Made by a program: the position numbers and the translations under genes. From positions 124,001-188,000 of the IMG/VR virus record IMGVR_UViG_3300035181_000357: a stretch of 64,000 bases of DNA. The stretch is one strand, 5' to 3'. Position 1 is the first letter of the stretch, and the number at the start of each line of letters is the position of its first letter. The notes under the pieces were generated by a model. That model was not told the DNA's origin, ran no database searches, and saw only the letters and a program-made list of their open reading frames with translations. Below are positions 42,926-58,712 of the stretch, piece by piece.

Positions 42926-43282
42926 ATGCTCAAGGTCCTGTTCATCGACGATCAGATCGAGCGTGTGGAAGCTGCTAAAGCGTATCTGACCAGAGAGGGG
43001 GACGAATTCACCTGGGCTACTGAAGTCCCCAACAACCTCGAAGACTACGACATCATCTCTTTCGATAACGATCTCGGTGTTGCTCCTGAAAAGGATGTCG
43101 TGATCCAGTTGGGTAAGCGTCTGTTCTGTGGTAACTGTTCTCTCGCGAACAAGATCATCACGGTCCATTCTATGAACCCTGTGGCCGCTGCCCGTATTGG
43201 AAGCTTGTGTGAAGGTTTGGGTGCCACCAATGTGGCCATCGTTCCCTTCTCTCGTATGTTGTTAGGTCCCAACCAGTTGTAG
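42926..43282 (+). CDS. Standalone receiver-like domain, cyclic-phosphate-processing receiver (cREC) type
   Basis: VLFIDD, IISFDNDLG, ITVHSMNP..A..I motif set. Confidence 0.65.
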   Translation: MLKVLFIDDQIERVEAAKAYLTREGDEFTWATEVPNNLEDYDIISFDNDLGVAPEKDVVIQLGKRLFCGNCSLANKIITVHSMNPVAAARIGSLCEGLGATNVAIVPFSRMLLGPNQL

Positions 43283-43287
43283 GAGTT

Positions 43288-44091
43288 GTGGTGCACAAGT
43301 TCTATTCTGACCGTTCCGATAACGATGACCACGCCGATCAGAACGGCTGGAACCATGGTCTTGGTAAGGTTGTTCGCAAGGCCGTTCAGGATCCTGAGGC
43401 TACTGCCTACGATAGCTTGGATTCCCTTCCGAAGCACGAAAACAACCACAAACGCCTTGGGTACTGGGGACATCGTCGTCCCAACATCCACTGGCGAAAG
43501 GTCAATCGTTGGGTTCTGGCCCAGGTTGGTAGGCATATCGACGATGTCCGTTCTGAGTTCATCAAACTGGCCAACGAAGGTGATCCCTACATCCGTGAAC
43601 GCCTCGTCTCAGCTTTCGAATCCAATGTCCCGACCATCCGTGGGCAGATTGAAATCTGCATCAGCAAAGAGGGTGGATGGCCATACCTTGGTCTGGTTAC
43701 TGAAACCGGGCACATCGAAAAGAGCTACTACCGTCGTCGAGATCTGTACATCAATCTCTCTGGGATCATCTGTCAGGTTTCCAACAAGACGTACAAGGAG
43801 CTTGAACGCCTTCAGGAGAAGCAGCGGAAGGAAAGCAACAACAAGGTTATCTGGGTTAATGATGTCCGAGGTTTCATCTGTCTCCGGGATCAGTGGTTCG
43901 AAGTCATCTATGCTAAGTTGAACTCTGATTTCAATCGCAATCTTCTTAGCCTTGACTGTCTTCTGTGTCGGAAGCTGAAGAAGAGCTGGTATAACTCGCA
44001 CCTCGAAGTCTTCGGTCATCTCCACGGTAATATCTACTGTGTCGCCCTTCGGTCTGTGTCTTATCGAGATATCGAAAAACTTCTTGTGTAG
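43288..44091 (+). CDS. Hypothetical protein
   Basis: 267 aa, GTG start after AGGAG. Confidence 0.65.
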   Translation: MVHKFYSDRSDNDDHADQNGWNHGLGKVVRKAVQDPEATAYDSLDSLPKHENNHKRLGYWGHRRPNIHWRKVNRWVLAQVGRHIDDVRSEFIKLANEGDPYIRERLVSAFESNVPTIRGQIEICISKEGGWPYLGLVTETGHIEKSYYRRRDLYINLSGIICQVSNKTYKELERLQEKQRKESNNKVIWVNDVRGFICLRDQWFEVIYAKLNSDFNRNLLSLDCLLCRKLKKSWYNSHLEVFGHLHGNIYCVALRSVSYRDIEKLLV

Positions 44092-44412
44092 TTCTTTTAA
44101 ATCAAAGACGATTCTTTTAAGTTTGCTATGATTGCTGATGAACTTAACTTAACAAGGTGAAGTAATGTATCGTGAACATGATGAAAAAGAATGTAAGAGC
44201 TGTAATTGCCCTGAGCATGGTAAGCCAAATGGTGGGGCAGGAGAGATTACCCTCCTGTTTGTAATCATTGTTGTTGTTGTTCTCTTGTATTGGAGATAAC
44301 ATGGCTGAATGTAGGCAATGTCAAAATCCTCATCTCAAAAGTCTTCGGATCTCTACATGGTAATGTCTACTACATTATCGAGATATCGAAAAACTTCTTG
44401 TGTAGTTCTTTT
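44061..44412 (+). repeat. 38-bp exact direct repeat with degenerate upstream extension
   Basis: TTATCGAGATATCGAAAAACTTCTTGTGTAGTTCTTTT at 44061-44098 and 44375-44412. Confidence 0.9.
44165..44299 (+). CDS. 44-aa Cys-containing membrane peptide
   Basis: MYREHDEKECKSCNCPEHGKPNGGAGEITLLFVIIVVVVLLYWR; AAGGTG RBS. Confidence 0.5.
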   Translation: MYREHDEKECKSCNCPEHGKPNGGAGEITLLFVIIVVVVLLYWR

Positions 44413-44494
44413 GACTTCGAGTAATAATTATGTAGAACCAAACGGTTCTCTTCCCACAGAGAGTGGGTCGTATTAAAAATACACGGAGAGTGTC

Positions 44495-45508
44495 ATGCAT
44501 GAATATGCGATCGTCATCGGAAGATTTCAACCCTTCCATCTGGCCCACAAGCAACTGCTCGAGAAAGCGTTCGAGGTTGCGAGTAGGGTCATAATTATTT
44601 TAGGTAGCCATGCAGCTGCCCAAACTTCCAAGAATCCCTGGACTAGTCAAGAACGAATCAAGATGATCGAGTCGGCTCTGACACAAGAGCAGAGTGATCG
44701 CATTACATTCCTTCCAGTCCGCGACTATCTTTACAATGAGAATGTCTGGTTGTCTGAAATTCAGCAGAAGGTTAAGGTGGTCACCAACAACTCCAAATCG
44801 GTCGTGTTGATTGGTCACATGAAGGATGAGTCAAGCAGTTATCTCAAGACTTTCCCTCAGTGGGAATTCATTGAGACCAAGGCCGCTTTTGATCTGTCTG
44901 CTACTGATATTCGCCATTCTCTGTTCACCACTGAAGGATGGGCTGACTCAGCTCAAAAAGTTCCTCAGAAGGTGCAAAACTATCTGGTCAACTGGTGCCG
45001 AACTTCGGACTATGTTCGCCTGAAGGAAGAGTACACCTACCTCCAGAAGTATAAGGCTTCTTGGGCTGTGGCTCCTTATCCTGTGACCTTCGTGACTGCT
45101 GACGCTGTCGTGATCAAGTCTGGTCACGTCCTAGTGGTCAAGCGTGGTGGAAATCCTGGCAAGGGCTTGATCGCTCTCCCTGGTGGATTCGTAAATCAGA
45201 ATGAAAGCCTTGATGTGGCTTGCCTTCGAGAGCTCAAGGAAGAGACCAAGATAAAGGTCAGCATGGATAAGCTGACCTCTGCTCGTCAAACCAACCACGT
45301 GTTCGACCACCCACAGCGTAGTCTCCGTGGTCGTACTATCACTTATGCCTACCTGTTCGACTTGGGTAAAGAGGGAGACCTCCCAACCGTCAAGGGTTCA
45401 GATGATGCCGAGACTGCTTTCTGGATGCCTATTGGAGATGTATATTCCAATGAGGCTACCTTCTTCGAAGATCATCGCGACATCATTCTCTATTTCCTCG
45501 GCCGATAG
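44495..45508 (+). CDS. nadM: Bifunctional NMN adenylyltransferase / Nudix hydrolase (NadM-Nudix)
   Basis: IGRFQPFHLAH (HxxH), SATDIR, ALPGGF...RELKEET Nudix box. Confidence 0.95.
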   Translation: MHEYAIVIGRFQPFHLAHKQLLEKAFEVASRVIIILGSHAAAQTSKNPWTSQERIKMIESALTQEQSDRITFLPVRDYLYNENVWLSEIQQKVKVVTNNSKSVVLIGHMKDESSSYLKTFPQWEFIETKAAFDLSATDIRHSLFTTEGWADSAQKVPQKVQNYLVNWCRTSDYVRLKEEYTYLQKYKASWAVAPYPVTFVTADAVVIKSGHVLVVKRGGNPGKGLIALPGGFVNQNESLDVACLRELKEETKIKVSMDKLTSARQTNHVFDHPQRSLRGRTITYAYLFDLGKEGDLPTVKGSDDAETAFWMPIGDVYSNEATFFEDHRDIILYFLGR

Positions 45509-45514
45509 GCTACC

Positions 45515-45826
45515 ATGAATTCTCACAAACCTACTCCAACCATTTCCTACAAGGACAACTGGTACCATCACGAATACTATGTCGATGGGAAACAACTCAA
45601 GGACATTAGACGAGTTGAGATCGGAAAAGAATTAAAGTCATTCGTAGTTCCTGTCAACTCGTTCAAGGATGCTGTGACCTATAACGATATGGGTCATGAA
45701 TATACGTCATATTCAACTCAGTTTACCGTGACCATGCGCGACGAGATGCTTCTGATTCCAAACGAAATCCCTCTATCACGTCTTCTCAGTCTTGGCTTCT
45801 TCGTCAAACTCGTTGATGGTGAATAA
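45515..45826 (+). CDS. Hypothetical protein
   Basis: 103-aa ORF between the NAD genes. Confidence 0.55.
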   Translation: MNSHKPTPTISYKDNWYHHEYYVDGKQLKDIRRVEIGKELKSFVVPVNSFKDAVTYNDMGHEYTSYSTQFTVTMRDEMLLIPNEIPLSRLLSLGFFVKLVDGE

Positions 45827-45848
45827 ACTTTCCTAAAGGAGAAATACC

Positions 45849-47261
45849 ATGTATAATTATAACTTGATACTAGATTCGGATAGTTACAAAATGTCTCACT
45901 GGGTACAATACCCACATGGAGATAACTTCAAGACCACTTCCATGTTCTCCTATCTGGAGAGTCGTGGTGGTAAATATGATTTCACCCTTTGGTTCGGACT
46001 CCAGTATCTCTTGAAAGAATACTTGTCCCAGCCCATCACGATGGAGATGGTCGAAGAAGCCAAGGAGATCACTGAACTCCACGGTACTCCCTTCAATTAT
46101 GATGGTTGGAAGTACATTGTCGAGAAGCTTGGTGGTCGTATTCCTGTTCGTATCCGTGCCGTCCCTGAAGGAACTAAGGTTCCTATCCACAATATCCTGA
46201 TGTCCGTCGAATCCACTGATGGGAATGTGCCATGGATCGCCAGCCATGTGGAAACCATGCTTATGCGTTGTTGGTATCCTACTACTGTAGCCACTCAATC
46301 CAAGACCATCAAGGATCTTATCCTCAGCTATCTCACAAAGACATCAGAAGATCCTCAAGATGAGATCGCTTTCAAGCTTCACGACTTCGGTAGCCGTGGT
46401 GTCAGCTCCTTTGAATCTGCTGGCTGGGGTGGTGCTGCCCATCTGGTAAACTTCATGGGAACTGATACGATTGCTGGTCTTCTCCTAGCTCGTAAGTTCT
46501 ATCATGAACCTATGGCTGGTTACTCTATCCCTGCTGCCGAGCACAGTACTATCACTAGCTGGGGTCGTGAGAACGAAGTCCAAGCATATCGTAACATGCT
46601 CAAGCAGTATGCTAAGCCTGGTGCATTACTGGCTGTGGTCTCTGATTCCTACGATATCTACAACGCTTGTGAGAATCTCTGGGGTGGAGAGCTTCGCCAG
46701 GAAGTCATTAACTCCGGCGCTACCGTGGTTATCCGCCCTGACTCTGGTCATCCTGCTACTGTGGTTCTCAAGTGCCTCGAGCTTCTCGGTTCAAAATTCG
46801 GCTACACCATTAATTCTAAGAACTACCGCGTACTCAATAACGTTCGTGTTATCCAGGGTGACGGTGTGAATTACGACTCCATCCTGGAGATCTTGGAAGT
46901 TGCCACTCAACATGGTTGGTCTGCCACCAACATCGCCTTTGGTATGGGTGGTGCTCTTCTTCAAATCGTCAACCGTGATACTCAGCAGTTCGCCTATAAG
47001 TGCAGCAGCATGACTCGTACCTACACTGATGGGCACGAAGAGCAGATTGATGTCTACAAGCAGCCTAAGACCGACTCTATGAAGAACTCTAAGCGTGGTC
47101 GGCTGGATCTGATCTTGACTGAGACTGGGTATCACACTGTCAAACTCCTTCTTGGTGAACAGGCCCATCCTGCCTCTGCAATGCAGACCGTCTATGAAAA
47201 TGGTGAGATCCTGGTTGATGACACCTTTGATATTATTCGTGAGAGGTCCAACCATGTCTAG
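45849..47261 (+). CDS. nadV: Nicotinamide phosphoribosyltransferase
   Basis: DSYKMSH, KLHDFGSRG, IPAAEHSTI, VSDSYD, VIRPDSG, IQGDG, KSKRG-like C-terminus. Confidence 0.95.
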   Translation: MYNYNLILDSDSYKMSHWVQYPHGDNFKTTSMFSYLESRGGKYDFTLWFGLQYLLKEYLSQPITMEMVEEAKEITELHGTPFNYDGWKYIVEKLGGRIPVRIRAVPEGTKVPIHNILMSVESTDGNVPWIASHVETMLMRCWYPTTVATQSKTIKDLILSYLTKTSEDPQDEIAFKLHDFGSRGVSSFESAGWGGAAHLVNFMGTDTIAGLLLARKFYHEPMAGYSIPAAEHSTITSWGRENEVQAYRNMLKQYAKPGALLAVVSDSYDIYNACENLWGGELRQEVINSGATVVIRPDSGHPATVVLKCLELLGSKFGYTINSKNYRVLNNVRVIQGDGVNYDSILEILEVATQHGWSATNIAFGMGGALLQIVNRDTQQFAYKCSSMTRTYTDGHEEQIDVYKQPKTDSMKNSKRGRLDLILTETGYHTVKLLLGEQAHPASAMQTVYENGEILVDDTFDIIRERSNHV

Positions 47262-48159
47262 TTGGAATAAGATCGAGATCAAAGAATCGTCTGAGGGTAA
47301 TGTCTGGAAGTTTGTATTCACCAAGGACGATGCCATTGTTGAGGCAGTTCTTTATCGCTATGAGTCATTTGAAGAGAGAACTGTCATTTGTTTTTCTGTT
47401 CAATCGGGTTGTCCCGTTGGTTGTAAATTCTGTGGAACCGGGGGTCACTATGTAAGAAATCTAACAGCAAACGAAATTGCATCCCAAGTTTGGCACATCA
47501 TCCGTCTAATGAAGATTGACCCATTTAAGGTCAAAAAATTTCAATTGATGGGAATGTCGATGGGTGAGCCGATGCTCAATTGGGAGAATCTAAAGGAAGC
47601 AATTACCCTCCTAAAAGAGTTCGGATACACTCATGCTCAATACCTAATCAGCACAGTAGGTATCGCAGATCTCGATACATTCAATGACATCATCGGATTT
47701 TCTAGAGAGAATCCCCAGATCGGTCTTCAATTCTCTATCCACAAGTCTACAGATGAACAGCGAAATAGACTTATTCCATACAAGAATAAGCTGACCTTAT
47801 ATGAACTCATGGTAGCTGGTGTCAACTGGCATTCTGCAACAGGACGTCCAGTATATCTCAACTATTGTATCGATGGTACCAATAACACAGAAGATGATTT
47901 CAATAACTTGAGGGGTATGTTCAATCCTGAAGTATTTAATTTGACATTTTCTGTGATCTGTGCTAAGAATGAATCTATCAAAGATGCGGCATATCGTAAT
48001 CTCGATGTCATCAATGCTTTCAGTCAGAAATTCCTGGAAGATGGATACAACGTCCGTGTCTTCAATCCAGCAGGTCAGGACGACATCGGTGGTGGATGTG
48101 GCCAGTTATTCGCTGTTCAGAACTGGTTCGAAAATCATAAACACCGTGGGGAGGTTTGA
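47254..48159 (+). CDS. RlmN/Cfr-family class A radical SAM RNA methyltransferase-like protein
   Basis: ICFSVQSGCPVGCKFC (CxxxCxxC plus upstream Cys), MGEP, STVG, SIH, GGCGQL; ATG 47254 overlaps nadV end. Confidence 0.85.
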   Translation: MSSWNKIEIKESSEGNVWKFVFTKDDAIVEAVLYRYESFEERTVICFSVQSGCPVGCKFCGTGGHYVRNLTANEIASQVWHIIRLMKIDPFKVKKFQLMGMSMGEPMLNWENLKEAITLLKEFGYTHAQYLISTVGIADLDTFNDIIGFSRENPQIGLQFSIHKSTDEQRNRLIPYKNKLTLYELMVAGVNWHSATGRPVYLNYCIDGTNNTEDDFNNLRGMFNPEVFNLTFSVICAKNESIKDAAYRNLDVINAFSQKFLEDGYNVRVFNPAGQDDIGGGCGQLFAVQNWFENHKHRGEV

Positions 48160-48190
48160 GTATAACCTAGTTAGTTCCCAGGAGATATCC

Positions 48191-48838
48191 TTGTCAAAAA
48201 ATGATGAACCTATCCTAATCCCTATCTCCATGGAAAAAGACGAAGAGACATGTAGAGAAGTCTTGTGTAAGTATACTCCCACTATCTACGTCCGTGGTGA
48301 GTTTAATGATGAGATGGTTGAGTCGTTTAGAAAAGCGGTCAACACTATTAAGTATGAACGAAATATTGACATCGCTACCGTAGATATCAGTAGCCCAGGT
48401 GGTTCAGTTCTGTCTCTGTTCGAGATGCTTGGAACCATGCAACAGTCTGGGTTAAAGTATCTCACATACTGTAGTGGACAAGCAGCATCCTGTGCAGCGA
48501 TCTTGTTATCGGCTGGTGAACCAGGACAACGATGGATTTCACCGATGGGATCTACCATGATCCATGGTGTTAGTAATTTCTTGGGATATGCACCGTTTGA
48601 AGAGCATGTAGTAGAACAGGAATTTATTGCAAAGACTAACGAGAAGTTGATGCACCTGTTAGCTAAAAATTGTAAGATGCCGTATAAGGGTTTGATGAAG
48701 AAGATCAAGGATTCTGGTGCTCGTTCTCTATGGCTACTGGCCGAGGATACACTACAACTTGGTCTCGTAGATAAGATCGGGTATCCTGTCGTCATCAAAG
48801 AAAATCAGTACGCAGTAAAGAATGCTTTAGATAAGTAA
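48191..48838 (+). CDS. clpP: ClpP-like serine protease
   Basis: ISSPGGSV, GQAASCAAILLSAG, MIHGV, ALQLGLVD-like tail; TTG start after GGAG. Confidence 0.85.
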   Translation: MSKNDEPILIPISMEKDEETCREVLCKYTPTIYVRGEFNDEMVESFRKAVNTIKYERNIDIATVDISSPGGSVLSLFEMLGTMQQSGLKYLTYCSGQAASCAAILLSAGEPGQRWISPMGSTMIHGVSNFLGYAPFEEHVVEQEFIAKTNEKLMHLLAKNCKMPYKGLMKKIKDSGARSLWLLAEDTLQLGLVDKIGYPVVIKENQYAVKNALDK

Positions 48839-48913: not shown

Positions 48914-50434
48914 ATGAGATTCATAAACGAATACACCCAGAAATCAGCTAATACCCCAGAGATCAAGGTCTTCACTGATAAGAGCACATATCACAAGCTA
49001 GCGAAAGTAGCTTTGACTGGTGTACTAAACGGTCAGTACTACAAATCTGAGGACAAGATAGTCAGTGAACTAACTTCTGTAGTTGAGAAGATGGCAATCG
49101 AAGATCCTATCTTCTTGCTAAAGGCAGCTAAGGCTAGCCGTGCCCTCAACATGAAGTTGTTCCCTAAGCTAGCTGTCGCTGCTGTCCTATCGAAGTCACA
49201 GGACAAGTCTGTAGATCCAGAGATCGAAAAGATTCTGGCTACCTACAACCCAAACCAGCTTTTAGAGTTCATCTTGATGTTGAAGAACCGTCAGTATGGT
49301 TCTGGCCTGGGGTCTAGATCACAGAAGCTCGTCGCTCGTGGACTAGCTCGTGTCTCAGCTAAGCGTCTAGAGGATTGGACTCTGTCCGAAGGTTCTAGCC
49401 TTAACAGAATCCTACGTCTCGTTCACCCAACACTTAATCCAGTCGTCAAGTACGTCCTGAAGGCTGATAAGGAAGCAGAGTGGACTGATCGTCAGCGTGC
49501 ACTCGAGACCATCAAGATGCTTCAGCAGAAGAGAGAAGGGGATTACGAGGCTGAGGTAGCAGCATTAATCAAAGTCTACAATCTTCCATTCAATTCTTTG
49601 AAGGGTGTAATCTCAGCTACCAACAAAGCTGCCTGGGACGAGATCGCAGAGAACATGTCTGTGATCCAGCTCCTAATCAACCTCAAGTCCCTTGACAATA
49701 TGGGTGTGATGACCACTTCTAGACTTCGTCGTCTTCTAGATGCCAAGTTTGTAAAGGGCAAGACCAGGATTCTTCCTTTTGACATCATGCGGCCAATGGC
49801 TAATGCAGATGCTAAGTACAGGGATGTCTTGATCGAGTTCTTGGAGAAGCTAGTCCTAGATCCTATTCCATCCCTTGAGGGTAAGACCGTCGGTCTAATC
49901 TTTGACGGTAGTGGATCAATGGGTGGTCCTAACTATGCTGGTAGCCCATGGATGACTTCTATGGCCTTGGGTCTGCCTCTTATGTCCAGCTGTAATGTAG
50001 CTGAGTCCATCATCTATTCTACCACTGTCCGAAAGGCTCCAGAGTTCAGAAAGTATGATGGTGCAGAGAACTTCAAGCGTATCTCCGAGGCATTCCCATC
50101 TGGTGGAACCAACACCGATATGGCGATTGACCACTTCACCAAGAACAACATCGTTGTTGATGTTCTTGTTCTCATCACTGATGAGCAGCAGAACGGCTAC
50201 AGGTGTGGTGGATTCCAGAACGCCTGGGCAAGATACAGAAAGCTTCACCCAGAAGCAGAACTACTTATCGTAAACGCTACTCCATATGAGTGGCACATGA
50301 CAGAGACTGGAACCAATGGTGTCACCATCGTCCAGACTCTGACCCCAGCTGTTTACCAGATGATCCAGTACCAGGGTCAGGATATGGTAGACGTCATTTC
50401 CAACATGGAACTAGGAGACAGCAATGAAGATTAA
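48914..50434 (+). CDS. Ro60/TROVE-like ribonucleoprotein with C-terminal vWA domain
   Basis: Helical N-terminus, QLLINLKSL, MIDAS DGSGSM, GGTNT, LITDEQ. Confidence 0.7.
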   Translation: MRFINEYTQKSANTPEIKVFTDKSTYHKLAKVALTGVLNGQYYKSEDKIVSELTSVVEKMAIEDPIFLLKAAKASRALNMKLFPKLAVAAVLSKSQDKSVDPEIEKILATYNPNQLLEFILMLKNRQYGSGLGSRSQKLVARGLARVSAKRLEDWTLSEGSSLNRILRLVHPTLNPVVKYVLKADKEAEWTDRQRALETIKMLQQKREGDYEAEVAALIKVYNLPFNSLKGVISATNKAAWDEIAENMSVIQLLINLKSLDNMGVMTTSRLRRLLDAKFVKGKTRILPFDIMRPMANADAKYRDVLIEFLEKLVLDPIPSLEGKTVGLIFDGSGSMGGPNYAGSPWMTSMALGLPLMSSCNVAESIIYSTTVRKAPEFRKYDGAENFKRISEAFPSGGTNTDMAIDHFTKNNIVVDVLVLITDEQQNGYRCGGFQNAWARYRKLHPEAELLIVNATPYEWHMTETGTNGVTIVQTLTPAVYQMIQYQGQDMVDVISNMELGDSNED

Positions 50435-50903
50435 TATCGACTGTGGTGTAGAGAAGTATGTCATCAAGATTGATGATGGCGCTGTTTCTTTCAAGAATGG
50501 AGATCTGTTCTTGAAGTCTGATAGTGTCACCATCAATAGGAGTGTCTTCGAACCAACGAAGATCCTAGTAGTTCCAGATGCTGTCAAGACTAAGGGTCAG
50601 CAACTGAGAGAGCTCCGTGTTCAGTATGGCCTGACTCAGAAGGAACTTGCAAAGAAGCTATCACCAAATCCTAGCAGGTTTAGTAATGGTCTCACGGATA
50701 AAGACATCTCAAACTATGAAACAGGTAGGAAAGATGTTCCATTCTGGTTGCTACCACATGCTAAGGAATTGTTAGAAGCTGAGAAAGAGCAATGGGAACT
50801 CCGATCAGACGCGGATGGGTTATTATGTCGTGGGCGCCATTCTCGTCGTGTTCTGTCCAAGGCAGAGATTGGAAAGGCACTAGAGACTTCGAAGAAGCGA
50901 TGA
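50424..50903 (+). CDS. XRE-family HTH protein
   Basis: LRELRVQYGLTQKELA...ISNYETG. Confidence 0.7.
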   Translation: MKINIDCGVEKYVIKIDDGAVSFKNGDLFLKSDSVTINRSVFEPTKILVVPDAVKTKGQQLRELRVQYGLTQKELAKKLSPNPSRFSNGLTDKDISNYETGRKDVPFWLLPHAKELLEAEKEQWELRSDADGLLCRGRHSRRVLSKAEIGKALETSKKR

Positions 50904-52354: not shown

Positions 52355-52612
52355 ATGATTCAAGAATGGGTTCTACAAACCGTCCTATGTGATGATCCAG
52401 GAGCTATGGCAGTAGATTGGGACACTTTTAATATCGGTGTGGTAGAAGATGGGGTATTCAGGTCGATATACAGTTGCTGGTGTCTCCCTGATGCAGAACA
52501 TCTGTTATCAGCATTGCGTTGGTATTCCACATTCTCTAAAGATGGTATCATAAAAGAACCTGTACAACCTGTTCCTCAAACAAAGAAACGAAAGAAAGTA
52601 TCTGATGTATAA
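52355..52612 (+). CDS. Hypothetical protein
   Basis: 85 aa, AGAGG RBS. Confidence 0.55.
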   Translation: MIQEWVLQTVLCDDPGAMAVDWDTFNIGVVEDGVFRSIYSCWCLPDAEHLLSALRWYSTFSKDGIIKEPVQPVPQTKKRKKVSDV

Positions 52613-55052
52613 TCCTTTAACTGGTTTCGAAAATGATCCAAAGGTATCGAATTGTATTCGTGCTTTCGCTGAACATCCAGAGATTGCTGAAGAGATTAAA
52701 GCATACTATATCCTAGAAAAGGTAGACGATGATGGATATACAGAAGACCGTCATCTCATAGCAGAAACCACCTGGAAGACTGGTGATTTCATTCATTTCA
52801 CACATAAGATTGTAGGTAGAGACTTTCAAGATCCATATGAAGGTCACGAAGGTCCTACTGATGGTAGAGATTTTGAAGGTCAGTTTGCTATAATCCCAAA
52901 GAAGAGAGCAAAGAAGATCATAGATTTTCAGAAAGCTTTAGGAAAAGTTACTAAATATAGAAATCTTGAAGATATCCCAAAGAGAGAAGACATGAAGAAG
53001 AAATCTAGACTAGTGACTAAAAAATCTACCGGACCTACTTTGTATTCAAAGTTAGAAGATATCAAAAATGAAATCGATAAATATCTGAAGTGGGATCATG
53101 TCAATGACGACACAAATGAAGATATTCCAGAAGACAATATCACTGCCTCCTATAGACTGTATACAAAAGAAGGAATCATCATATTCTCTGTATCAGTCTT
53201 TGATAAGACGAAGAATGGAAATGAGATCTTCACCGGATTCTCTAAGCCAGGATCCGAACAATTTGAGAACACTGGTCTATATAATTTCAACAACGTGAAC
53301 AAGATGCTGAAGAATGTAGCTAATGTCGCAGCTACAAAATATCATATCGAGGAAGCACCTGTCGAAGATCTTCCAGAGATGGGTAACGATGATGACAAAG
53401 AATTCCTAAAGTCGATCGGGATTCGTTCTAGTCAGAAGAAGGCATATGCTCCTAATGTAGCTCAGGCAGCTAACACTTTTTTAGAGAAATACATTGGAAA
53501 GATTCTGTCTCCGAGTGAGTTGAAGGAAGCTATATCTTCCGTATCTAGTTCCTGGAAAGATGTAGTAAACTACATGAAAGATTTCAGTTTGATAGTACCT
53601 GATGGGAATAATTTTAAGATCTTAAATAGAGATATGGTGGATGACATGAAGATTCGTACTGGTTCAAAACATGCAGCAACTAGCCCAACTCCTCCTGGAG
53701 CTGCGTTGGTATCAGCGATCAAAAATCGTAAACAGAACCCTGAAGATTTCGAGACATTCAAGGCCTTGTTTAATGCCTTTAAAGAAGATTTCAGTGCAAC
53801 CAGCGGTCAGGAAGGATGCTACTACATCATGGAGCGTCTAGGATTCTTAGAGAAGGATATAAATCCTCTCTTAGGTTTGGGTAGTACTGGAACTCCTGAA
53901 GAGAAGTTCGTCAGAAATTATTGGGATGAAGTGAACCGTCAGTATGATGAAAAGAAGAATCAAGATCGTACTACCAAGTATGGCCCAGACTTAGTGGCTC
54001 TCTGTAAGGAAGTTTATGCCTACGCAAACCAGCCTGAGAATTACGAGAATGGCTGGGACACGGTTGCAGAAGCTTGGGACCTAGAAGAACTGGCTGAAGA
54101 GATTAAGGACTGCAAGACCTTGGATGAAGCTCTCTCGATTATGAAGCAATACAAGACAGCATCCTCAAAGACTGGTAAGCAGAAACGCTCGAGATTGATG
54201 AAGCGCAGAGCAGGGATCGAGTTAGATTGGGATCCAGCTACCAGAAGAGACATAGGTAGAGAAGAAGCCAGAGCTAGTGACAAGATCCTAAGAGATCTCG
54301 GCACATATGTAGAGAAATTAAAATCTAGCCTGATACAAAATGGTGTATCTCTTGGCCAAGCTCTATCAAACATGAATCTGAAAGAGTTATTCACCTCTAC
54401 TGACTATACAAAGAGATCGCTCGGTAACAAGTTGAGATCACAGACAGAACAGTTCCTAAAGAACTATCCAGAGAAGGAACAGAACTTCTTTAAAGAGAAT
54501 TATGGACAGAACATTTCAGATATTCTAAGAAAAGTGGTAAAGACTAGTAATATAGATCCACAGATGTATGATATCAAACCTGATATCTCTCAAGATGTAT
54601 TGGAGAAGAAGTCCATGGATGCAGATCGTTACTATGGTGGACCTGACGAGAGTGGTCCAGATCCCGACGAAGTTACACAAGCACTAGTCTCTAAGTTCCC
54701 AATGGCTTTAGGGTTCATTTCTCAGAAGATAGATCCTCAGAGTCCTGACTGGGATATCATGAATAAAGTCAGTGACGAGATGTATCCAAAGGAATTTATC
54801 GACAGAGTAGAGGTTGATCTTTGGGATGGTGATGACGTATACTATTTCGATTATGATGTAGACGCTTCTGAGATTGAGCAGATCAATGCCAATTTCTTGA
54901 AGAGACAACATGAGTTGGGTTCTACGAATCCTGAACCTCTCTGCAAGCTCGAACTCGTCCCATATCACGAGCTACCCAATAAGGTCATTGAGAAGCTAGA
55001 AGAAGACTTCGAAGACTATGTGGACCTGGATCCTGAACCATGGGTTGATTAA
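52605..55052 (+). CDS. Large acidic multi-segment hypothetical protein (candidate internal virion protein)
   Basis: 815 aa; acidic blocks separated by short basic linkers. Confidence 0.65.
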   Translation: MYNPLTGFENDPKVSNCIRAFAEHPEIAEEIKAYYILEKVDDDGYTEDRHLIAETTWKTGDFIHFTHKIVGRDFQDPYEGHEGPTDGRDFEGQFAIIPKKRAKKIIDFQKALGKVTKYRNLEDIPKREDMKKKSRLVTKKSTGPTLYSKLEDIKNEIDKYLKWDHVNDDTNEDIPEDNITASYRLYTKEGIIIFSVSVFDKTKNGNEIFTGFSKPGSEQFENTGLYNFNNVNKMLKNVANVAATKYHIEEAPVEDLPEMGNDDDKEFLKSIGIRSSQKKAYAPNVAQAANTFLEKYIGKILSPSELKEAISSVSSSWKDVVNYMKDFSLIVPDGNNFKILNRDMVDDMKIRTGSKHAATSPTPPGAALVSAIKNRKQNPEDFETFKALFNAFKEDFSATSGQEGCYYIMERLGFLEKDINPLLGLGSTGTPEEKFVRNYWDEVNRQYDEKKNQDRTTKYGPDLVALCKEVYAYANQPENYENGWDTVAEAWDLEELAEEIKDCKTLDEALSIMKQYKTASSKTGKQKRSRLMKRRAGIELDWDPATRRDIGREEARASDKILRDLGTYVEKLKSSLIQNGVSLGQALSNMNLKELFTSTDYTKRSLGNKLRSQTEQFLKNYPEKEQNFFKENYGQNISDILRKVVKTSNIDPQMYDIKPDISQDVLEKKSMDADRYYGGPDESGPDPDEVTQALVSKFPMALGFISQKIDPQSPDWDIMNKVSDEMYPKEFIDRVEVDLWDGDDVYYFDYDVDASEIEQINANFLKRQHELGSTNPEPLCKLELVPYHELPNKVIEKLEEDFEDYVDLDPEPWVD

Positions 55053-55111: not shown

Positions 55112-55134
55112 CTAGTTCCTTTCTGGAGGTAGAC

Positions 55135-55641: not shown

Positions 55642-55652
55642 GAGAAGAACAA

Positions 55653-55982: not shown

Positions 55983-55991
55983 GAGGCTACC

Positions 55992-56246
55992 ATGTTCCAT
56001 GGAAGTACCAGGAGTGATTTTGCTCTGAGTATGATTCAGGCTCGAGAGATGAACGTGGATCCTGAGATCATGCGATTGCTCGAAGATTTCGAAGCTGCGT
56101 ACGAACGAGCTTTCAAGTTTGCGATCGAACTCAAGAAACATAAGAATTTTGAAGACATCGGTGAACTACTCCGGCTTGAACTTTTCGGAGACAAAGAAGC
56201 TATCGATGATCTCTATAAAGAAATCAAAAACCGAAAGAGGGTGTAG
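55992..56246 (+). CDS. Hypothetical protein
   Basis: 84 aa. Confidence 0.55.
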   Translation: MFHGSTRSDFALSMIQAREMNVDPEIMRLLEDFEAAYERAFKFAIELKKHKNFEDIGELLRLELFGDKEAIDDLYKEIKNRKRV

Positions 56247-56247
56247 T

Positions 56248-56742
56248 TTGAAGAAGTCGCATAAGGTCATCATCCTGGCTGGTATCCCTGGTTCTGGAAA
56301 ATCCACCTATATTGAAGGTCTGATGAAGACTTTCAGTGAAGACATCTCGGTATCTATCGTGTCTGCCGATCACTATTTCATCAAGTACGGTACGTACAAG
56401 TATGTGGCACATGATATCCCACATGCTCACAAGCAGTGTCAGAACAGGTTCTCTGACGCTCTGGACATGGACGTTGACGTTATCTTTGTAGACAACACCA
56501 ACATCCTGAGTAAGCATCGCAAGCCATACGTCCAGGAGGCTCTGGATTGTGGCTATGAGGTTGAGATTCATGCTCTTCCTGCAGATGTCGAGGCTAGTGC
56601 AAGTAGGAACATTCACGGTGTGGACCTGGATGTCTGTCAGCGAATGTTCGATTCTTTCGATCTGGAGTTTGGAACTATCTACGACCATAAGCGTCAGAAG
56701 ATTGGGACTATCACCAAGGAACAGGTAGGCTTGAGTGGCTAA
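56248..56742 (+). CDS. Polynucleotide 5'-kinase-like P-loop protein (AAA_33 type), no phosphatase domain
   Basis: ILAGIPGSGKST, VSADHY, VDNTN, RNIHGV; TTG start after AGAGG (track start 56119). Confidence 0.8.
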   Translation: MKKSHKVIILAGIPGSGKSTYIEGLMKTFSEDISVSIVSADHYFIKYGTYKYVAHDIPHAHKQCQNRFSDALDMDVDVIFVDNTNILSKHRKPYVQEALDCGYEVEIHALPADVEASASRNIHGVDLDVCQRMFDSFDLEFGTIYDHKRQKIGTITKEQVGLSG

Positions 56743-57130
56743 ACAGCTATCATGTGGTGTCCTGGTTACACACAAGAATTCACTTCTTCTATGTCATGTA
56801 ACTGGGACTTACAATCGTTGGGATATTCCTAAAGGAATGCCTAATGATGGAGAAGATCACGTAGCTGCTGCTGTTCGAGAACTCAACGAAGAAACAGGGA
56901 TTGTACTCGGTGTTAACTACAGAGAGTTGGGTTACACCGAGTACACCAAGACGAAGGATTTGTTCCTTCTCTACCATGAAGGTCTGTACGAAGTATCGGA
57001 TATGACCTGTTTGTCGTTCTTTGAAGATGATCGTCCAGAGATGGATGGTTTTAGGTATTTTGATTTTAATGAAATTGTTGGCCACGTCACACCTAATCTG
57101 TATAAGGTATTGACTAAGTTCTTAGGGTGA
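56735..57130 (+). CDS. Nudix hydrolase
   Basis: PKG...GEDHVAAAVRELNEETGI Nudix box. Confidence 0.9.
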   Translation: MAKQLSCGVLVTHKNSLLLCHVTGTYNRWDIPKGMPNDGEDHVAAAVRELNEETGIVLGVNYRELGYTEYTKTKDLFLLYHEGLYEVSDMTCLSFFEDDRPEMDGFRYFDFNEIVGHVTPNLYKVLTKFLG

Positions 57131-57133
57131 GTT

Positions 57134-58225
57134 ATGGAAAGAAAGCTAGTAACTATTAGAGAGATCGCTGCAGTGAATCCTATCCCCGATGCAGATGCCA
57201 TCGAGGTGGTAACTGTAGATGGATGGAAAGTGGTCTCCAAGAAAAATGAGTTCAAGCCAGGAGATCTCTGCCTATACTTCGAGATCGACAGCTTCCTACC
57301 TATCAAGCCAGAGTATGAGTTTCTGCGTAAGAGTAGCTACAAGAAGGTCATCGATGGTACGGAAGGATTCAGACTCAAGACCGTAAAACTGCGTGGTCAG
57401 ATCAGCCAAGGTCTGGTTATGCCTATCTCAGAAGATATTCTGAAGACTCTGGCTCCAGTAGCTAGTTCGGATCTCAGGACTCTTCTGGACCAAGATCTCA
57501 CCGAGTTGTTTGGTGTGACCAAGTGGGAGCCACCTCTGTCTGCCTGTCTTTCTGGGTTGGTTAAGGGTAACTTCCCATCACATACTCCGAAGTCTGGCCA
57601 GGAGCGTATCCAGAATCTGAAATACTTCTTCGAACTCTATAAAGATGAAGAGTTCGAGATGAGTCTGAAACTCGATGGAAGTTCATGCACTATGTATTTG
57701 GATCGAGAGGATGTCTTTGGAGTCTGTTCACGTAATCTGGATCTGAAACCAGACGAGAGCAATAGCTTCTGGAAACAAGCCTATATTCATGGTGTTGAAG
57801 ACAGACTCAAGATAATTCATTCTGTATCTGGGTTGAATCTCAGTATCCAAGCTGAATTGGTTGGGGAAGGAATTCAGGAGAACCACGAGAAGATCAAGGG
57901 CCAAGATCTGTATGTCTTCAATATCTGGGACCAACACCTCGGACGATCCTTGACCCCATCTGAACGACATGCTACACTGGATGCTCTAAACGATCTCCAG
58001 GTCTTAGGTTCCAAGCCACTTAAACATGTCCCTGTAATTGGGTATGAGAAGGTCTTCACCAAGTATCAGACACTAGAAGCTCTCTTTGAATTCGTGGAAA
58101 GCCTAGCTGGGATGAATCCTGGTGTAATCCTCGAAGGCGTAGTGTTCAAGAGTGTAAGACCTATAAATGGTAGCATTGTAAGCTTTAAGATCGTCAGCAA
58201 TAAGTACCTTCTTTCCAAGAAATAA
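57134..58225 (+). CDS. ATP-dependent RNA ligase, Rnl2-related DRB0094-type
   Basis: N-terminal RKLVTIREI...DAIE, motif I KLDGSS, AELVGEGIQ, FNIW, EGVVFK, SFKIVSNKYL. Confidence 0.9.
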   Translation: MERKLVTIREIAAVNPIPDADAIEVVTVDGWKVVSKKNEFKPGDLCLYFEIDSFLPIKPEYEFLRKSSYKKVIDGTEGFRLKTVKLRGQISQGLVMPISEDILKTLAPVASSDLRTLLDQDLTELFGVTKWEPPLSACLSGLVKGNFPSHTPKSGQERIQNLKYFFELYKDEEFEMSLKLDGSSCTMYLDREDVFGVCSRNLDLKPDESNSFWKQAYIHGVEDRLKIIHSVSGLNLSIQAELVGEGIQENHEKIKGQDLYVFNIWDQHLGRSLTPSERHATLDALNDLQVLGSKPLKHVPVIGYEKVFTKYQTLEALFEFVESLAGMNPGVILEGVVFKSVRPINGSIVSFKIVSNKYLLSKK

Positions 58226-58228
58226 GAA

Positions 58229-58261
58229 TTGTCTGATTTACGAATTATTAAGTAACCTAAT
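58229..58261 (+). promoter_or_regulatory. Conserved phage promoter motif, copy 7, heading the RNA-gene island
   Basis: TTGTCT-N18-TAACCT-AAT. Confidence 0.6.
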
Positions 58262-58596
58262 AATGCCCGACGAAGTTTGCCCTGAAACCAAGTTAGAAAT
58301 TTCTTGTTCAGAGCCTGGTTGGTTGGGTAATAAGTGAAGTGAAGCGGCTGAGGCCACCCTGCTCTCTGAAAAATCAATAACTTAATGGTATCGAACGCAT
58401 CCGAGATTCAGGTCTCCGATGCTGAGATGAAACCACTACCTTTCCTGAATCTTAGAAATAAGGCTGTCGTGAGACTGCCTGTTTCCGTATGATTGCAGGA
58501 GGTTCCAACAAAATGTGGTCGCAGTTTATGGATGAAACTGCAGATATCTAGTATATGCCTGGTTCTCGATGATCCTATAAAATCGAAAACGAATTT

Positions 58597-58712
58597 GATC
58601 CCATAGCTCAGTTGGACAGAGCAACAGCCTTATCGCACTCCTGACCAGGTGGGTTTGGAACTGCATGGCTCTAAGCTGTAGGTCGCTGGTTCGAGCCCAG
58701 CTGGGATCACCA
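58597..58712 (+). tRNA. tRNA-Arg(UCU) interrupted by 39-nt insertion in the anticodon loop
   Basis: GATCCCA/TGGGATC acceptor, A20, ACAGC/GCTGT stem, T arm, ACCA; removing 58631-58669 restores loop CTTCTAA. Confidence 0.8.

What the first reader, a model, noticed from the sequence alone, without database searches (positions are those of the whole stretch)
42926..58712. Dispersed RNA healing/sealing system feeding directly into the RNA island
Seen: cREC-like receiver (42926), Ro60-like protein (48914), then contiguous PNK-like kinase, Nudix and RNA ligase (56248-58225) immediately before the interrupted tRNA-Arg. A metallophosphoesterase lies at 32978. Established: T4 Pnk/Rnl1 repair anticodon-nuclease cuts, and Ro60 with Y RNAs accompanies RNA repair operons. 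The kinase lacks a phosphatase domain, so 2',3'-end healing must come from elsewhere. Inference: the module both repairs tRNAs and matures the split or permuted RNAs found here.
Basis: partly seen in the sequence, partly recalled or inferred. Interest (0 to 1): 0.7.

Follow-up and report, generated by a model that had tools for sequence, protein, structure and literature searches.

The report
Phage RNA-repair and Ro60 gene neighbourhood
A large uncultured phage carries, next to its tRNA array, a conserved set of RNA-end-repair genes (kinase, Nudix, nick-sealing RNA ligase), a Ro60 protein with a probable Y-RNA partner, and NAD-salvage genes; this is a known kind of anti-defence toolkit, and nothing shows that it splices the odd tRNAs nearby.

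Summary
They are a cREC domain, a true Ro60/Rsr homologue, a PNK-clade kinase without a phosphatase domain, an intact Nudix, an Rnl5 (Naegleria/Deinococcus-type) nick-sealing RNA ligase, then a tRNA-Arg(UCU) carrying a 39-nt insert.

They are not one system:
- cREC sits with NAD-salvage genes (NMNAT-Nudix, NAMPT).
- Ro60 sits with ClpP and an RlmN/Cfr-like radical-SAM enzyme.
- Only kinase-Nudix-Rnl5 is a contiguous cassette.

Related metagenomic phages keep the order Ro60 ... kinase-Nudix-Rnl5. More distant ones pair Ro60 with RlaP, DSP phosphatase, Thg1 or cREC. A repair and quality-control neighbourhood is therefore supported, as already described for jumbo phages.

The maturation idea is not supported:
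- A relative with the same cassette has the same tRNA-Arg without the insert.
- No splicing endonuclease or RtcB is in the 210 kb held.
- Rnl5 enzymes seal duplex nicks.
- The "permuted" RNA at 62944-63092 has the native topology of YrlA Y RNAs, with a weak Rfam YrlA match, so it is more likely Ro60's partner than a ligation substrate.

Candidate 3'-end healers lie elsewhere in the genome: a 2H domain, a CCA-adding enzyme with a weak HD match, and RlaP.

Verdict: new member of a known kind, moderate interest.

The parts
42926..43282 (+). cREC (cyclic-phosphate-processing receiver-like) domain protein, 118 aa
   Evidence: Pfam PF20274 31.6 bits, above cut-off 27; phrog_1479. Acidic pair LFIDDQ and SFDND are visible in the translation. 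It lies two genes upstream of the NAD-salvage genes.
44495..45508 (+). Bifunctional NMN adenylyltransferase / Nudix (NadM-type)
   Evidence: Pfam CTP_transf_like + NUDIX; NCBIfam NF003791 432 bits, above cut-off 409.
45849..47261 (+). Nicotinamide phosphoribosyltransferase (NAMPT)
   Evidence: Pfam NAPRTase 1.2e-57 + NAMPT_N. 72% identical orthologue in L007.
47152..48159 (+). Radical-SAM RNA methyltransferase of the RlmN/Cfr family (divergent)
   Evidence: NCBIfam RlmN 4.4e-35 and Cfr 4.5e-31, both below their cut-offs. 76% orthologue in L006.
47960..48838 (+). ClpP-like protease (homology from about 48239)
   Evidence: Pfam CLP_protease 8.4e-24. Orthologues sit next to Ro60 in L007 and L019.
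48914..50434 (+). Ro60/Rsr homologue (TROVE ring + vWA with MIDAS DGSGSM)
   Evidence: phrog_850 6.4e-20. Profile against PDB: Rsr 2NVO 6e-17 full length, Ro60 9NEN and 1YVP. MIDAS motif invariant in 9 orthologues.
50424..50903 (+). HTH (XRE-type) protein downstream of Ro60, conserved in relatives
   Evidence: Pfam HTH_31 / HTH_19; orthologues in L006 and L007.
52605..55052 (+). Conserved large protein of unknown function (815 aa) between Ro60 and the kinase
   Evidence: No Pfam, PHROG or NCBIfam hit. Orthologues in L006, L007 and L020. The L006 copy has a weak ART-PolyVal-like hit; in alignment A7 that stretch looked like an insertion missing from the window copy, which is my reading of the summary output, not a tested result.
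56248..56742 (+). Stand-alone PNK-clade P-loop kinase (no phosphatase domain)
   Evidence: AAA_33 2.5e-11. Family profile against PDB: T4 Pnk 1.9e-11, PSTK 8.9e-11, C. thermocellum Pnkp kinase 3.8e-8, mammalian PNKP. GxPGSGKS P-loop and SAD Asp are invariant. Fused to NADAR in L006.
56735..57130 (+). Nudix hydrolase, substrate unassigned
   Evidence: Pfam NUDIX 1.3e-14. Complete Nudix box GMPNDGEDHVAAAVRELNEETGI. Only weak leanings to RppH and the ASFV g5R decapping enzyme. Conserved in L006 and L020.
57134..58225 (+). Rnl5-family ATP-dependent nick-sealing RNA ligase
   Evidence: PF21189 OB domain 143 bits + PF09414. NgrRnl 5COT 2e-68 with KLDGSS, EGVVFK and FKIVSNKYL motifs aligned. TIGR02306 213 bits, above cut-off 151.
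58228..58560 (+). Conserved non-coding stretch (candidate structured RNA of about 300 nt) between ligase and tRNA-Arg
   Evidence: 71-79% identical in L006 and L020, with blocks of invariance and some compensatory changes. No Rfam family.
58597..58712 (+). tRNA-Arg(UCU) with a 39-nt hairpin insert in the anticodon loop (58631-58669, or shifted by 1)
   Evidence: Rfam tRNA 58.1 bits with a 42-nt skipped stretch. ARAGORN intron call. The insert-free, otherwise identical gene is in L006. The insert is single-copy in the window and folds as an imperfect hairpin.
62944..63092 (+). YrlA-like (Y RNA-like) tRNA mimic: T arm, closed acceptor stem, D arm, with the 5' and 3' ends paired
   Evidence: Rfam YrlA 25.9 bits, E 8e-4 in a 181-nt search, below cut-off 69. 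9-bp terminal stem, z -2.83. 7/7 Watson-Crick closed acceptor followed by a D arm; apart from a weak A/T-rich hit at genome 15171 that I judge spurious, it is the only such unit in the 210 kb. The same script finds such units beside the Ro-like genes of phages VanLee and Atuin.
32978..34183 (-). Calcineurin-like metallophosphoesterase with an N-terminal HNH-associated repeat; link to the cassette unproven
   Evidence: Pfam Metallophos 5.9e-7, phrog_20266 1.1e-56. Not related to the 250-aa metallophosphoesterase that is syntenic in L006, L007 and L020.

Best explanation
The 16-kb stretch is a conserved auxiliary-gene neighbourhood of a large uncultured phage. It protects translation RNAs and NAD+ during infection. 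It is made of three separable modules, not one pathway.

1. cREC plus NMNAT-Nudix plus NAMPT rebuild NAD+ and may clear cyclic-phosphate or ADP-ribose derivatives.

2. Ro60, with ClpP, an RlmN/Cfr-like methyltransferase and an HTH protein nearby, forms an RNP with the YrlA-like tRNA mimic embedded in the tRNA array at 62944-63092. This RNP would handle damaged or misfolded RNA.

3. The kinase-Nudix-Rnl5 cassette normalises 5' ends and then seals breaks held in a base-paired context. The kinase would turn 5'-OH into 5'-P. The Nudix would turn 5'-ppp, capped or adenylylated ends into 5'-P. The likely targets are tRNAs nicked by host ribotoxins.

Healing of 2',3'-cyclic or 3'-phosphate ends, and rebuilding of 3' ends, would come from genes elsewhere in the genome: a 2H-domain protein, a CCA-adding enzyme with a weak HD match, RlaP, and possibly cREC or the metallophosphoesterase.

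Shown: homology, intact motifs, conserved synteny. Inferred: all substrates and the order of steps.
For: - Domain identities and intact catalytic motifs.
- The cassette and its position after Ro60 are conserved in L006 and L020. More distant relatives keep Ro60 with RlaP, an AAA_33 kinase and Rnl5 (L019), or with cREC, DSPc, Thg1, PTH2 and RlaP (L021).
- Kinase homologues occur in a phosphoesterase - RNA ligase - kinase cassette in Vibrio phage PS17B-2.
- Rnl5 sits at the edge of a normal tRNA array, near RtcB, in Microbacterium phage Cece.
- Ro-like genes sit in or beside tRNA arrays in Atuin, Sixama and Mx1.
- The own genome encodes RlaP, a CCA-adding enzyme and a 2H domain.
- YrlA-like features of the 62944-63092 RNA.
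- Published frameworks describe these same associations in jumbo phages and viruses (PMC7824862, PMC9503650) and Y RNAs next to phage Ro60 (PMC4201824).
Against: - No activity has been measured, and no RNA-seq was available.
- The physiological substrates of Rnl5 are unknown (PMC4408790).
- The kinase scores as well against PSTK as against T4 Pnk, and it lacks the T4 Arg38 equivalent. Its close relative is fused to NADAR, so its substrate might not be an RNA 5'-OH.
- The Nudix substrate is unassigned.
- Kinase homologues often stand without any ligase.
- The YrlA match is below Rfam's cut-off, and the RNA lies 12.5 kb from Ro60, not within 4 kb.
- The genome record is only about 69% complete.
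Confidence: 0.6

Rival explanations
1. One reading: the kinase-Nudix-ligase cassette, with cREC or a phosphoesterase, is a dedicated maturation machine. It would excise and rejoin the interrupted tRNA-Arg and join the ends of permuted or split RNAs of the island, besides repairing tRNAs.
For: - The ligase ends 371 nt upstream of the interrupted tRNA-Arg.
- The insert-bearing allele is stable across at least three metagenomes.
- The insert is a discrete hairpin placed in the anticodon loop, and removing it restores a perfect tRNA.
- Unexplained introns in tRNAs of very large phages have been reported (10.1101/356790).
Against: - L006 has the same cassette and the same tRNA-Arg without the insert.
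- A second, intact tRNA-Arg(UCU) lies at 63332-63406, so the interrupted copy is dispensable.
- No BHB motif was seen on inspection of the constrained fold, and the insert position is 33/34 or 34/35, not 37/38.
- No splicing endonuclease or RtcB is in the genome held.
- Rnl5 enzymes seal duplex nicks, not loop breaks (PMC4408790).
- Rnl5 borders ordinary tRNA arrays in other phages.
- The permuted RNA fits YrlA topology.
Confidence: 0.12
2. An NAD+/ADP-ribose-centred counter-defence. The kinase (NADAR-fused in a relative) and the Nudix would act on ADP-ribose derivatives or ADP-ribosylated nucleic-acid ends produced by host defence enzymes. They would work with cREC and the NAD-salvage genes. 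The ligase would seal only after such adducts are removed, or would be functionally separate.
For: - NADAR-kinase fusion in L006.
- cREC is adjacent to NMNAT-Nudix and NAMPT.
- A kinase homologue lies next to a prs-like gene in Pakpunavirus SPA01.
- A weak ART-like hit occurs in the L006 copy of the neighbouring large protein.
- An ADP-ribosylglycohydrolase lies near Rnl5 in phage Cece.
- Published predictions for cREC, NADAR and Nudix (PMC7824862, PMC9503650).
Against: - The kinase profile is closest to polynucleotide kinases.
- It sits in classic phosphoesterase-ligase-kinase cassettes elsewhere.
- The window copy has no NADAR.
- No ART, Macro or KptA was detected here.
Confidence: 0.2
3. 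No functional linkage. These are independent auxiliary genes that happen to lie in the same early or accessory region next to the tRNA array.
For: - Unrelated genes (ClpP, HTH, several ORFs without any match) are interspersed.
- L007 keeps the kinase without the Nudix or ligase.
- The syntenic metallophosphoesterase is missing here.
Against: RNA-repair-type genes recur around Ro60 in five independent contigs with different partners, and kinase-Nudix-ligase stays contiguous in three phages.
Confidence: 0.08

Closest known systems
Rnl5 nick-sealing RNA ligases (Deinococcus DraRnl, Naegleria NgrRnl; phage homologues)
   Same: Same two-domain layout (N-terminal OB, nucleotidyltransferase, no C-terminal appendage). 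Motif I lysine and motifs IV and V are conserved. E 2e-68 to NgrRnl. Above the TIGR02306 equivalog cut-off.
   Different: Here it ends a three-gene kinase-Nudix-ligase cassette at the edge of a 42-tRNA array. Activity and substrate were not tested.
T4 Pnk + Rnl1 tRNA anticodon-loop repair
   Same: A phage-encoded 5' kinase of the same P-loop clade plus an ATP-dependent RNA ligase. The presumed role is countering tRNA-cleaving host defence.
   Different: The kinase has no HAD 3'-phosphatase domain and lacks the Arg38 equivalent. The ligase is Rnl5, not Rnl1. A Nudix is inserted between them.
Bacterial Pnkp-type healing enzymes (C. thermocellum Pnkp: kinase + metallophosphoesterase + ligase) and the phage phosphoesterase-ligase-kinase cassettes
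   Same: The kinase profile matches the CthPnkp kinase domain (3.8e-8). Relatives L006, L007 and L020 carry a 250-aa metallophosphoesterase in the same neighbourhood. Vibrio phage PS17B-2 has phosphoesterase-ligase-kinase in a row.
   Different: The genes are separate, not fused. The syntenic phosphoesterase is absent from this window. No Hen1 methyltransferase was looked for.
Ro60/Rsr with YrlA Y RNAs (Salmonella rsr-yrlBA-rtcBA; mycobacteriophage and Gordonia phage Ro-like loci)
   Same: Full-length Ro60 homologue with MIDAS vWA. A tRNA mimic with a closed acceptor stem on the same strand. Ro beside tRNA arrays, as in Atuin and Sixama.
   Different: The candidate Y RNA lies 12.5 kb from Ro60, inside the tRNA array. 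It has a 20-nt acceptor loop that begins with an encoded ACCA. It scores below Rfam's cut-off and lacks a clear GNCGAAN0-1G motif in its 5' strand. No RtcB is present.
cREC / NAD+-ADPr networks of jumbo phages (Iyer et al. 2021, 2022)
   Same: cREC near NAD salvage, a Nudix, a nucleotide kinase, an RNA ligase and a calcineurin-like phosphoesterase, the associations reported in PMC7824862 and PMC9503650.
   Different: No sirtuin, KptA, Macro or 2H gene lies within the window. cREC is 13 kb from the ligase.
Short 'enigmatic' tRNA introns of Lak and other huge phages (Devoto et al.)
   Same: A short insert in a phage tRNA gene, with insert-free alleles in related genomes (10.1101/356790).
   Different: Here the insert is a 39-nt hairpin placed at or inside the anticodon (33/34 or 34/35). 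Splicing has not been tested in either case.

Membership tests
Rnl5 RNA ligase | N-terminal OB-like domain specific to the family | tested here: met
   PF21189 143.3 bits, residues 5-98.
Rnl5 RNA ligase | Nucleotidyltransferase domain with motif I lysine (KxDG) and motifs IV and V | tested here: met
   KLDGSS, EGVVFK and FKIVSNKYL are aligned to NgrRnl. TIGR02306 is above its cut-off.
Rnl5 RNA ligase | No C-terminal appendage after the NTase domain | tested here: met
   The alignment runs to residue 360 of 363, against 335 of 340 in NgrRnl.
Rnl5 RNA ligase | Seals 3'-OH/5'-PO4 nicks with an RNA 3'-OH strand | not testable with these tools
   Needs a biochemical assay.
T4-type bifunctional Pnkp | P-loop (GxxGxGKS/T) and catalytic Asp of the 5' kinase | tested here: met
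   GIPGSGKST and SAD align with T4 GCPGSGKST and Asp35.
T4-type bifunctional Pnkp | Arg38-equivalent that contacts the phosphate of the 5' nucleotide (role recalled from memory of the T4 literature) | tested here: not met
   The family has SADxYF. There is no Arg at the aligned position.
T4-type bifunctional Pnkp | C-terminal HAD 3'-phosphatase domain | tested here: not met
   The protein is 164-178 aa and is a kinase domain only.
Ro60 / TROVE | Full-length homology to the Ro60/Rsr ring plus vWA | tested here: met
   Profile against 2NVO 6e-17 over 21-502 / 27-511; also 9NEN and 1YVP.
Ro60 / TROVE | MIDAS motif in the vWA domain | tested here: met
   DGSGSM is invariant in 9 orthologues.
Ro60 / TROVE | Pfam gathering score for this protein itself | tested here: not met
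   vWA_Ro60 18.6 against 27.7 bits, and no TROVE hit. The L006 orthologue passes at 29.3.
Ro60 / TROVE | Bound Y RNA partner | tested here: inconclusive
   There is a candidate at 62944-63092. Binding was not tested.
YrlA Y RNA (RF02553) | Order T arm - closed acceptor stem - D arm, enclosed by a stem | tested here: met
   The cmscan alignment covers model positions 23-87. A 7/7 Watson-Crick acceptor hairpin is followed by a D arm.
YrlA Y RNA (RF02553) | Rfam gathering score (69 bits) | tested here: not met
   25.9 bits. The control phage VanLee scored 47 and 33 bits.
YrlA Y RNA (RF02553) | 5' and 3' ends pair to form the Ro-binding stem with the GNCGAAN0-1G motif | tested here: inconclusive
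   A 9-bp terminal stem is predicted, z -2.83. Only a GCGAAG in the 3' strand was seen, with no clear motif in the 5' strand.
YrlA Y RNA (RF02553) | Encoded within about 4 kb of Ro60 on the same strand (PMC4201824) | tested here: not met
   Same strand, but 12.5 kb downstream.
cREC domain | Pfam PF20274 gathering score | tested here: met
   31.6 bits against 27.
cREC domain | Context with NAD/ADPr or RNA-repair genes, never with a histidine kinase (PMC7824862) | tested here: met
   NMNAT-Nudix and NAMPT lie 1.2-2.6 kb downstream. No histidine kinase turned up among the ORFs scanned in the window, and none was searched for specifically.
Nudix hydrolase | Nudix box Gx5Ex7REUxEExGU | tested here: met
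   GMPNDGEDHVAAAVRELNEETGI; PF00293 54.8 bits.
Protein-spliced tRNA intron (archaeal/eukaryal type) | Bulge-helix-bulge motif at the exon-intron junctions | tested here: not met
   The constrained fold gives a plain imperfect hairpin. No 3-nt bulges flanking a 4-bp helix were seen on inspection.
Protein-spliced tRNA intron (archaeal/eukaryal type) | A splicing endonuclease is available | tested here: not met
   PF01974 is absent from the 210 kb held, which is about 69% of the genome. The host was not examined.
Group I intron in a bacterial tRNA | Catalytic core of about 200 nt or more | tested here: not met
   The insert is 39 nt, and no Rfam intron family matches.
RtcB-type RNA repair operon | RtcB ligase present | tested here: not met
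   PF01139 has no match in the own genome.

The most novel reading that the evidence does not exclude
The 39-nt hairpin in tRNA-Arg(UCU) is a genuine protein-processed phage tRNA intron, or a removable guard against anticodon nucleases. In that case the adjacent 5' kinase, Nudix and Rnl5 ligase would heal and seal the exons after excision by an unidentified nuclease. That would be a bacterial-virus counterpart of enzymatic tRNA splicing.
Probability: 0.1. Interest if true: 0.85.

Novelty: new member of a known kind. Interest (0 to 1): 0.42.

Why it matters
The locus adds a lineage of large environmental phages to the published picture that big phages carry RNA-repair, Ro60/Y-RNA and NAD-salvage toolkits beside their tRNA arrays. 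Three things make it useful.

1. It offers a compact, conserved kinase-Nudix-Rnl5 cassette in which the long-unknown physiological substrate of Rnl5 ligases could be sought.
2. It points to a Ro60 partner RNA hidden inside a tRNA array. Annotation pipelines would either miss such an RNA or call it a broken or permuted tRNA.
3. It supplies a natural pair of alleles, tRNA-Arg with and without a 39-nt anticodon-loop hairpin, with which the question of short introns in phage tRNAs can be tested directly.

Tried and rejected
- Near-identity DNA searches of the phage collection and IMG/VR found no close relative. A 17-mer from the conserved non-coding stretch hit two unrelated viral contigs by chance.
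- Rfam found no family for the 58228-58560 stretch or for the insert.
- RNA sequencing runs: none was listed, so splicing could not be tested. The 'skips 39' joint in DNA contigs comes from short contigs of other, insert-free tRNA-Arg genes and says nothing about splicing.
- My own covariance model of the T arm - acceptor hairpin - D arm (R1) also scored junctions between neighbouring tRNAs as high as the candidate, at 30 bits. It therefore did not discriminate. I relied on explicit pairing checks instead.
- The window's metallophosphoesterase was tested as the missing 3'-end healer. It is unrelated to the syntenic one in the relatives and has no match in the PDB.
- The Nudix substrate could not be narrowed.
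- BHB and group I readings of the insert were rejected.

Full report
**Source and setting.** The window is bases 124001-188000 of a single 210,611-bp, 41.5% GC viral record. CheckV rates the record about 69% complete. The same DNA is held by sediment and microbial-mat metagenomes. The genome has 42 ARAGORN tRNA calls and a tmRNA, all clustered at genome 182.6-194.6 kb. No near-identical phage is in the phage collection or IMG/VR.

**Check of the observation.**
- 42926-43282 passes the Pfam cREC_REC cut-off (31.6 against 27 bits).
- 48914-50434 is weak on Pfam (vWA_Ro60 18.6 against 27.7 bits). It matches phrog_850 (6e-20) and actinophage 'Ro-like' genes. A profile of nine orthologues aligns over nearly its full length with D. 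radiodurans Rsr (2NVO, 6e-17) and with human and Xenopus Ro60. The vWA MIDAS motif DGSGSM is invariant.
- The kinase (56248-56742 by the TTG start used in public gene calls; an ATG at 56206 is possible) is a bare P-loop kinase (AAA_33).
- 56735-57130 is a Nudix with a complete Nudix box.
- 57134-58225 is an Rnl5 ligase. It has the N-terminal OB domain (PF21189, 143 bits), matches NgrRnl at 2e-68 with motifs I, IV and V aligned, and passes TIGR02306.
- The tRNA-Arg at 58597-58712 is interrupted.
- The metallophosphoesterase at 32978-34183 (-) is real.

**What lies between the named genes.** The stretch is not one operon-like system.
- Two genes after cREC come a NadM-type NMNAT-Nudix (NF003791 above cut-off) and NAMPT. 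This is a two-enzyme NAD+ salvage route, and I recall the same pair being described as a phage counter-defence.
- Then come an RlmN/Cfr-family radical-SAM RNA methyltransferase (4e-35, below cut-off), ClpP, Ro60 and an HTH protein.
- Next are several ORFs without any match and a conserved 815-aa protein of unknown function.
- The kinase-Nudix-ligase cassette follows. cREC therefore sits in an NAD context, which is one of the two contexts in which the domain was defined (PMC7824862, PMC9503650).

**The kinase.** A profile of 42 family members gave these PDB matches:

| PDB match | E-value |
|---|---|
| T4 polynucleotide kinase | 1.9e-11 |
| Archaeal PSTK | 8.9e-11 |
| C. thermocellum Pnkp kinase domain | 3.8e-8 |
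| Mammalian PNKP | about 3e-7 |

- The P-loop and the Asp that aligns with T4 Asp35 are invariant. The T4 Arg38 equivalent is absent.
- The protein belongs to the PNK clade, but its substrate is not fixed by sequence.
- Kinase homologues occur as the N-terminal part of rV5-like 'PNK/phosphoesterase' genes. In Vibrio phage PS17B-2 the order is phosphoesterase - RNA ligase - kinase. Many others stand alone or in other nucleotide contexts.

**Relatives.** Exact-protein look-ups gave five related contigs.

| Contig | Identity to the window | Gene content in order |
|---|---|---|
| L006 | kinase 66%, Ro60 76% | rIIB, radical SAM, Ro60, HTH, 250-aa metallophosphoesterase, large protein, NADAR-kinase fusion, Nudix, Rnl5 (split by a GIY-YIG gene), then tRNAs |
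| L020 | Ro60 76% | Same order, with an intact Rnl5 |
| L007 | kinase 54% | NMNAT-Nudix, NAMPT, ClpP, HTH, metallophosphoesterase and kinase; no Nudix or ligase; a DSP phosphatase downstream |
| L019 | Ro60 52% | ClpP, Ro60, RlaP, AAA_33 kinase, Rnl5 |
| L021 | Ro60 48% | PTH2, Thg1, cREC (faint), DSPc, Ro60, RlaP |

- Ro60 in this lineage is thus persistently surrounded by RNA-end-processing genes, and kinase-Nudix-Rnl5 is a conserved cassette in three phages.
- The 250-aa metallophosphoesterase that is syntenic in three relatives is absent from the window and from the rest of the held genome. It is unrelated to the window's 401-aa enzyme.

**Where 3'-end healing could come from.** The own genome holds several candidates, all inferred and none tested:
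- A 2H (LigT-like) domain inside a 734-aa protein at genome 78.7-80.9 kb.
- RlaP at about 199.0-200.0 kb.
- A CCA-adding enzyme with a weak HD match at about 200.3-201.5 kb. RlaP and this enzyme lie just beyond the far end of the tRNA array.

RtcB, KptA, DSPc and the tRNA-splicing endonuclease were not found.

**The interrupted tRNA-Arg.**
- L006 carries, downstream of its ligase, a tRNA-Arg(UCU) that matches the window's gene across both exons apart from position 2, and it lacks the insert. The insert is therefore 39 nt at 58631-58669, or shifted by one base, between positions 33/34 or 34/35.
- It is single-copy in the window.
- It folds as an imperfect hairpin that extends the anticodon arm.
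- It has no BHB motif and is far too short for a group I intron.
- The insert-bearing allele is present without any difference in contigs from at least three metagenomes, so it is not an assembly error.
- A second, intact tRNA-Arg(UCU) lies at 63332-63406.
- No RNA run could be listed.
- So the cassette does not co-vary with the insert (n = 1 comparison). Whether the insert is spliced remains open.
- Short unexplained introns in tRNAs of huge phages have been reported before (10.1101/356790).

**The 'permuted' RNA at about 62960.** The sequence 62944-63092 reads in this order: leader, T arm (GGAGG-TTCGAAT-CCTCC), acceptor 3' strand TCCCGGA, ACCA plus 16 nt, acceptor 5' strand TCCGGGA, D arm, tail.
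- Rearranged, it makes a cloverleaf.
- In its natural order it is exactly the topology of YrlA Y RNAs: a tRNA-like domain whose acceptor stem is closed, with the RNA ends on the anticodon side (PMC4201824; 10.1101/312249).
- The natural-order fold pairs the two ends in a 9-bp stem (z -2.83).
- Rfam's YrlA model aligns to 62983-63066 at 25.9 bits, E 8e-4 for a 181-nt search, below the 69-bit cut-off. As a control, phage VanLee gave 47 and 33 bits beside its Ro-like gene.
- A pairing script finds such units beside the Ro-like genes of VanLee and Atuin. In this 210-kb genome it finds this unit and one weak A/T-rich hit at genome 15171 that I judge spurious.
- Sixama has a unit inside its tRNA array, 1.3 kb from Ro.
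- My own covariance model did not discriminate against tRNA-tRNA junctions.
- I rate the Y-RNA reading at about 0.6. It removes the need for a ligase to 'mature' this RNA.

**Ligase specificity and placement.** Rnl5 enzymes seal 3'-OH/5'-PO4 nicks in duplexes with an RNA 3'-OH strand, and their physiological substrates are unknown (PMC4408790, PMC5397189). Rnl5 also borders an ordinary tRNA array in Microbacterium phage Cece, near RtcB and an ADP-ribosylglycohydrolase. It lies 2 kb from a metallophosphatase in Sinorhizobium phage phiM12. Placement next to tRNAs is therefore not specific to interrupted tRNAs.

**Mechanism proposed.** Inferred unless stated otherwise.
1. Host ribotoxins nick tRNAs or other structured RNAs.
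2. 3' ends are cleared by 2H, HD, cREC or phosphoesterase activities, and are rebuilt by RlaP and the CCA-adding enzyme.
3. The kinase phosphorylates 5'-OH ends.
4. The Nudix converts triphosphate, capped or abortively adenylylated 5' ends to 5'-P.
5. Rnl5 seals breaks held in a helix.
6. Ro60 with the YrlA-like RNA handles misfolded or damaged RNAs.
7. The NAD-salvage genes counter NAD+ depletion.

An alternative in which the kinase and Nudix act on ADP-ribose derivatives is kept at 0.2, because of the NADAR fusion.

**Verdict.** This is a new member of a known kind of phage RNA-repair, Ro60 and NAD toolkit. The open items are the insert in tRNA-Arg, the candidate Y RNA, and a conserved non-coding stretch of about 300 nt at 58228-58560.

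Noticed in passing
window 58228-58560 (+); L006 13687-14060; L020 10616-11100: A non-coding stretch of about 300 nt between the ligase and tRNA-Arg is 71-79% conserved in three phages. It has invariant blocks, long-range helices predicted by RNAalifold and a few compensatory changes. One module (ACCAC...GUGGU) is duplicated in L020. No Rfam family matches. It shares a UAAUGCCC...GAAG motif with the 5' part of the YrlA-like RNA.
   Followed up: partly
window 62944-63092 (+): A tRNA-like unit in permuted order (T arm, closed acceptor stem with an encoded ACCA in its loop, D arm) with paired ends. It is best read as a YrlA-type Y RNA, the likely partner of the Ro60 homologue.
   Followed up: yes
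window 47152-48159 (+): A radical-SAM protein of the RlmN/Cfr RNA-methyltransferase family (E 4e-35, below the family cut-offs). It is conserved in L006, just upstream of ClpP and Ro60.
   Followed up: partly
L006 11620-13628: In the relative, the Rnl5 gene is split into an OB-domain ORF and a ligase-domain ORF by a GIY-YIG homing-endonuclease gene. This could be an intron or an intervening mobile gene.
   Followed up: no
L006 10001-10924 (P0002): The orthologous kinase is fused at its N terminus to a NADAR domain (81.9 bits). The window copy keeps only a linker-like N-terminal tail.
   Followed up: partly
own genome 192253-192328 (outside the window): ARAGORN calls a tRNA with anticodon CUA (an amber suppressor, labelled tRNA-Pyl). 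This hints at stop-codon reading in this phage or its host.
   Followed up: no
window 61966, and own genome 188336, 189929, 193913: Orphan T-arm-like elements lie outside the ARAGORN calls. At least two (genome about 188.28-188.36 kb and 189.88-189.96 kb) look like whole tRNA-like genes that were missed. Several called tRNAs are unusually long (Ile 92 nt, Thr 87, Asn 86, Lys 86).
   Followed up: partly
L025 (Gordonia phage VanLee) 3444-3672: The record's only annotated tRNA, tRNA-Arg(tct), lies just upstream of the Ro-like gene and overlaps two YrlA-model matches (47 and 33 bits). It scores below the tRNA cut-off, so it is probably a Y RNA, not a tRNA.
   Followed up: partly
window 58661-58767: In all four metagenomes, contig depth over the 3' half of tRNA-Arg is 270-890x, against 5-25x for the phage. 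Very similar cellular tRNA-Arg(UCU) genes are therefore abundant in the same samples, which may be a clue to the host.
   Followed up: no
own genome 78723-80927 (-), locus L024: A 734-aa protein has a central 2H phosphoesterase domain (38.9 bits) and faint Acb1-like and polyvalent-protein-domain similarity. It could be a cyclic-nucleotide or RNA-end phosphodiesterase.
   Followed up: partly
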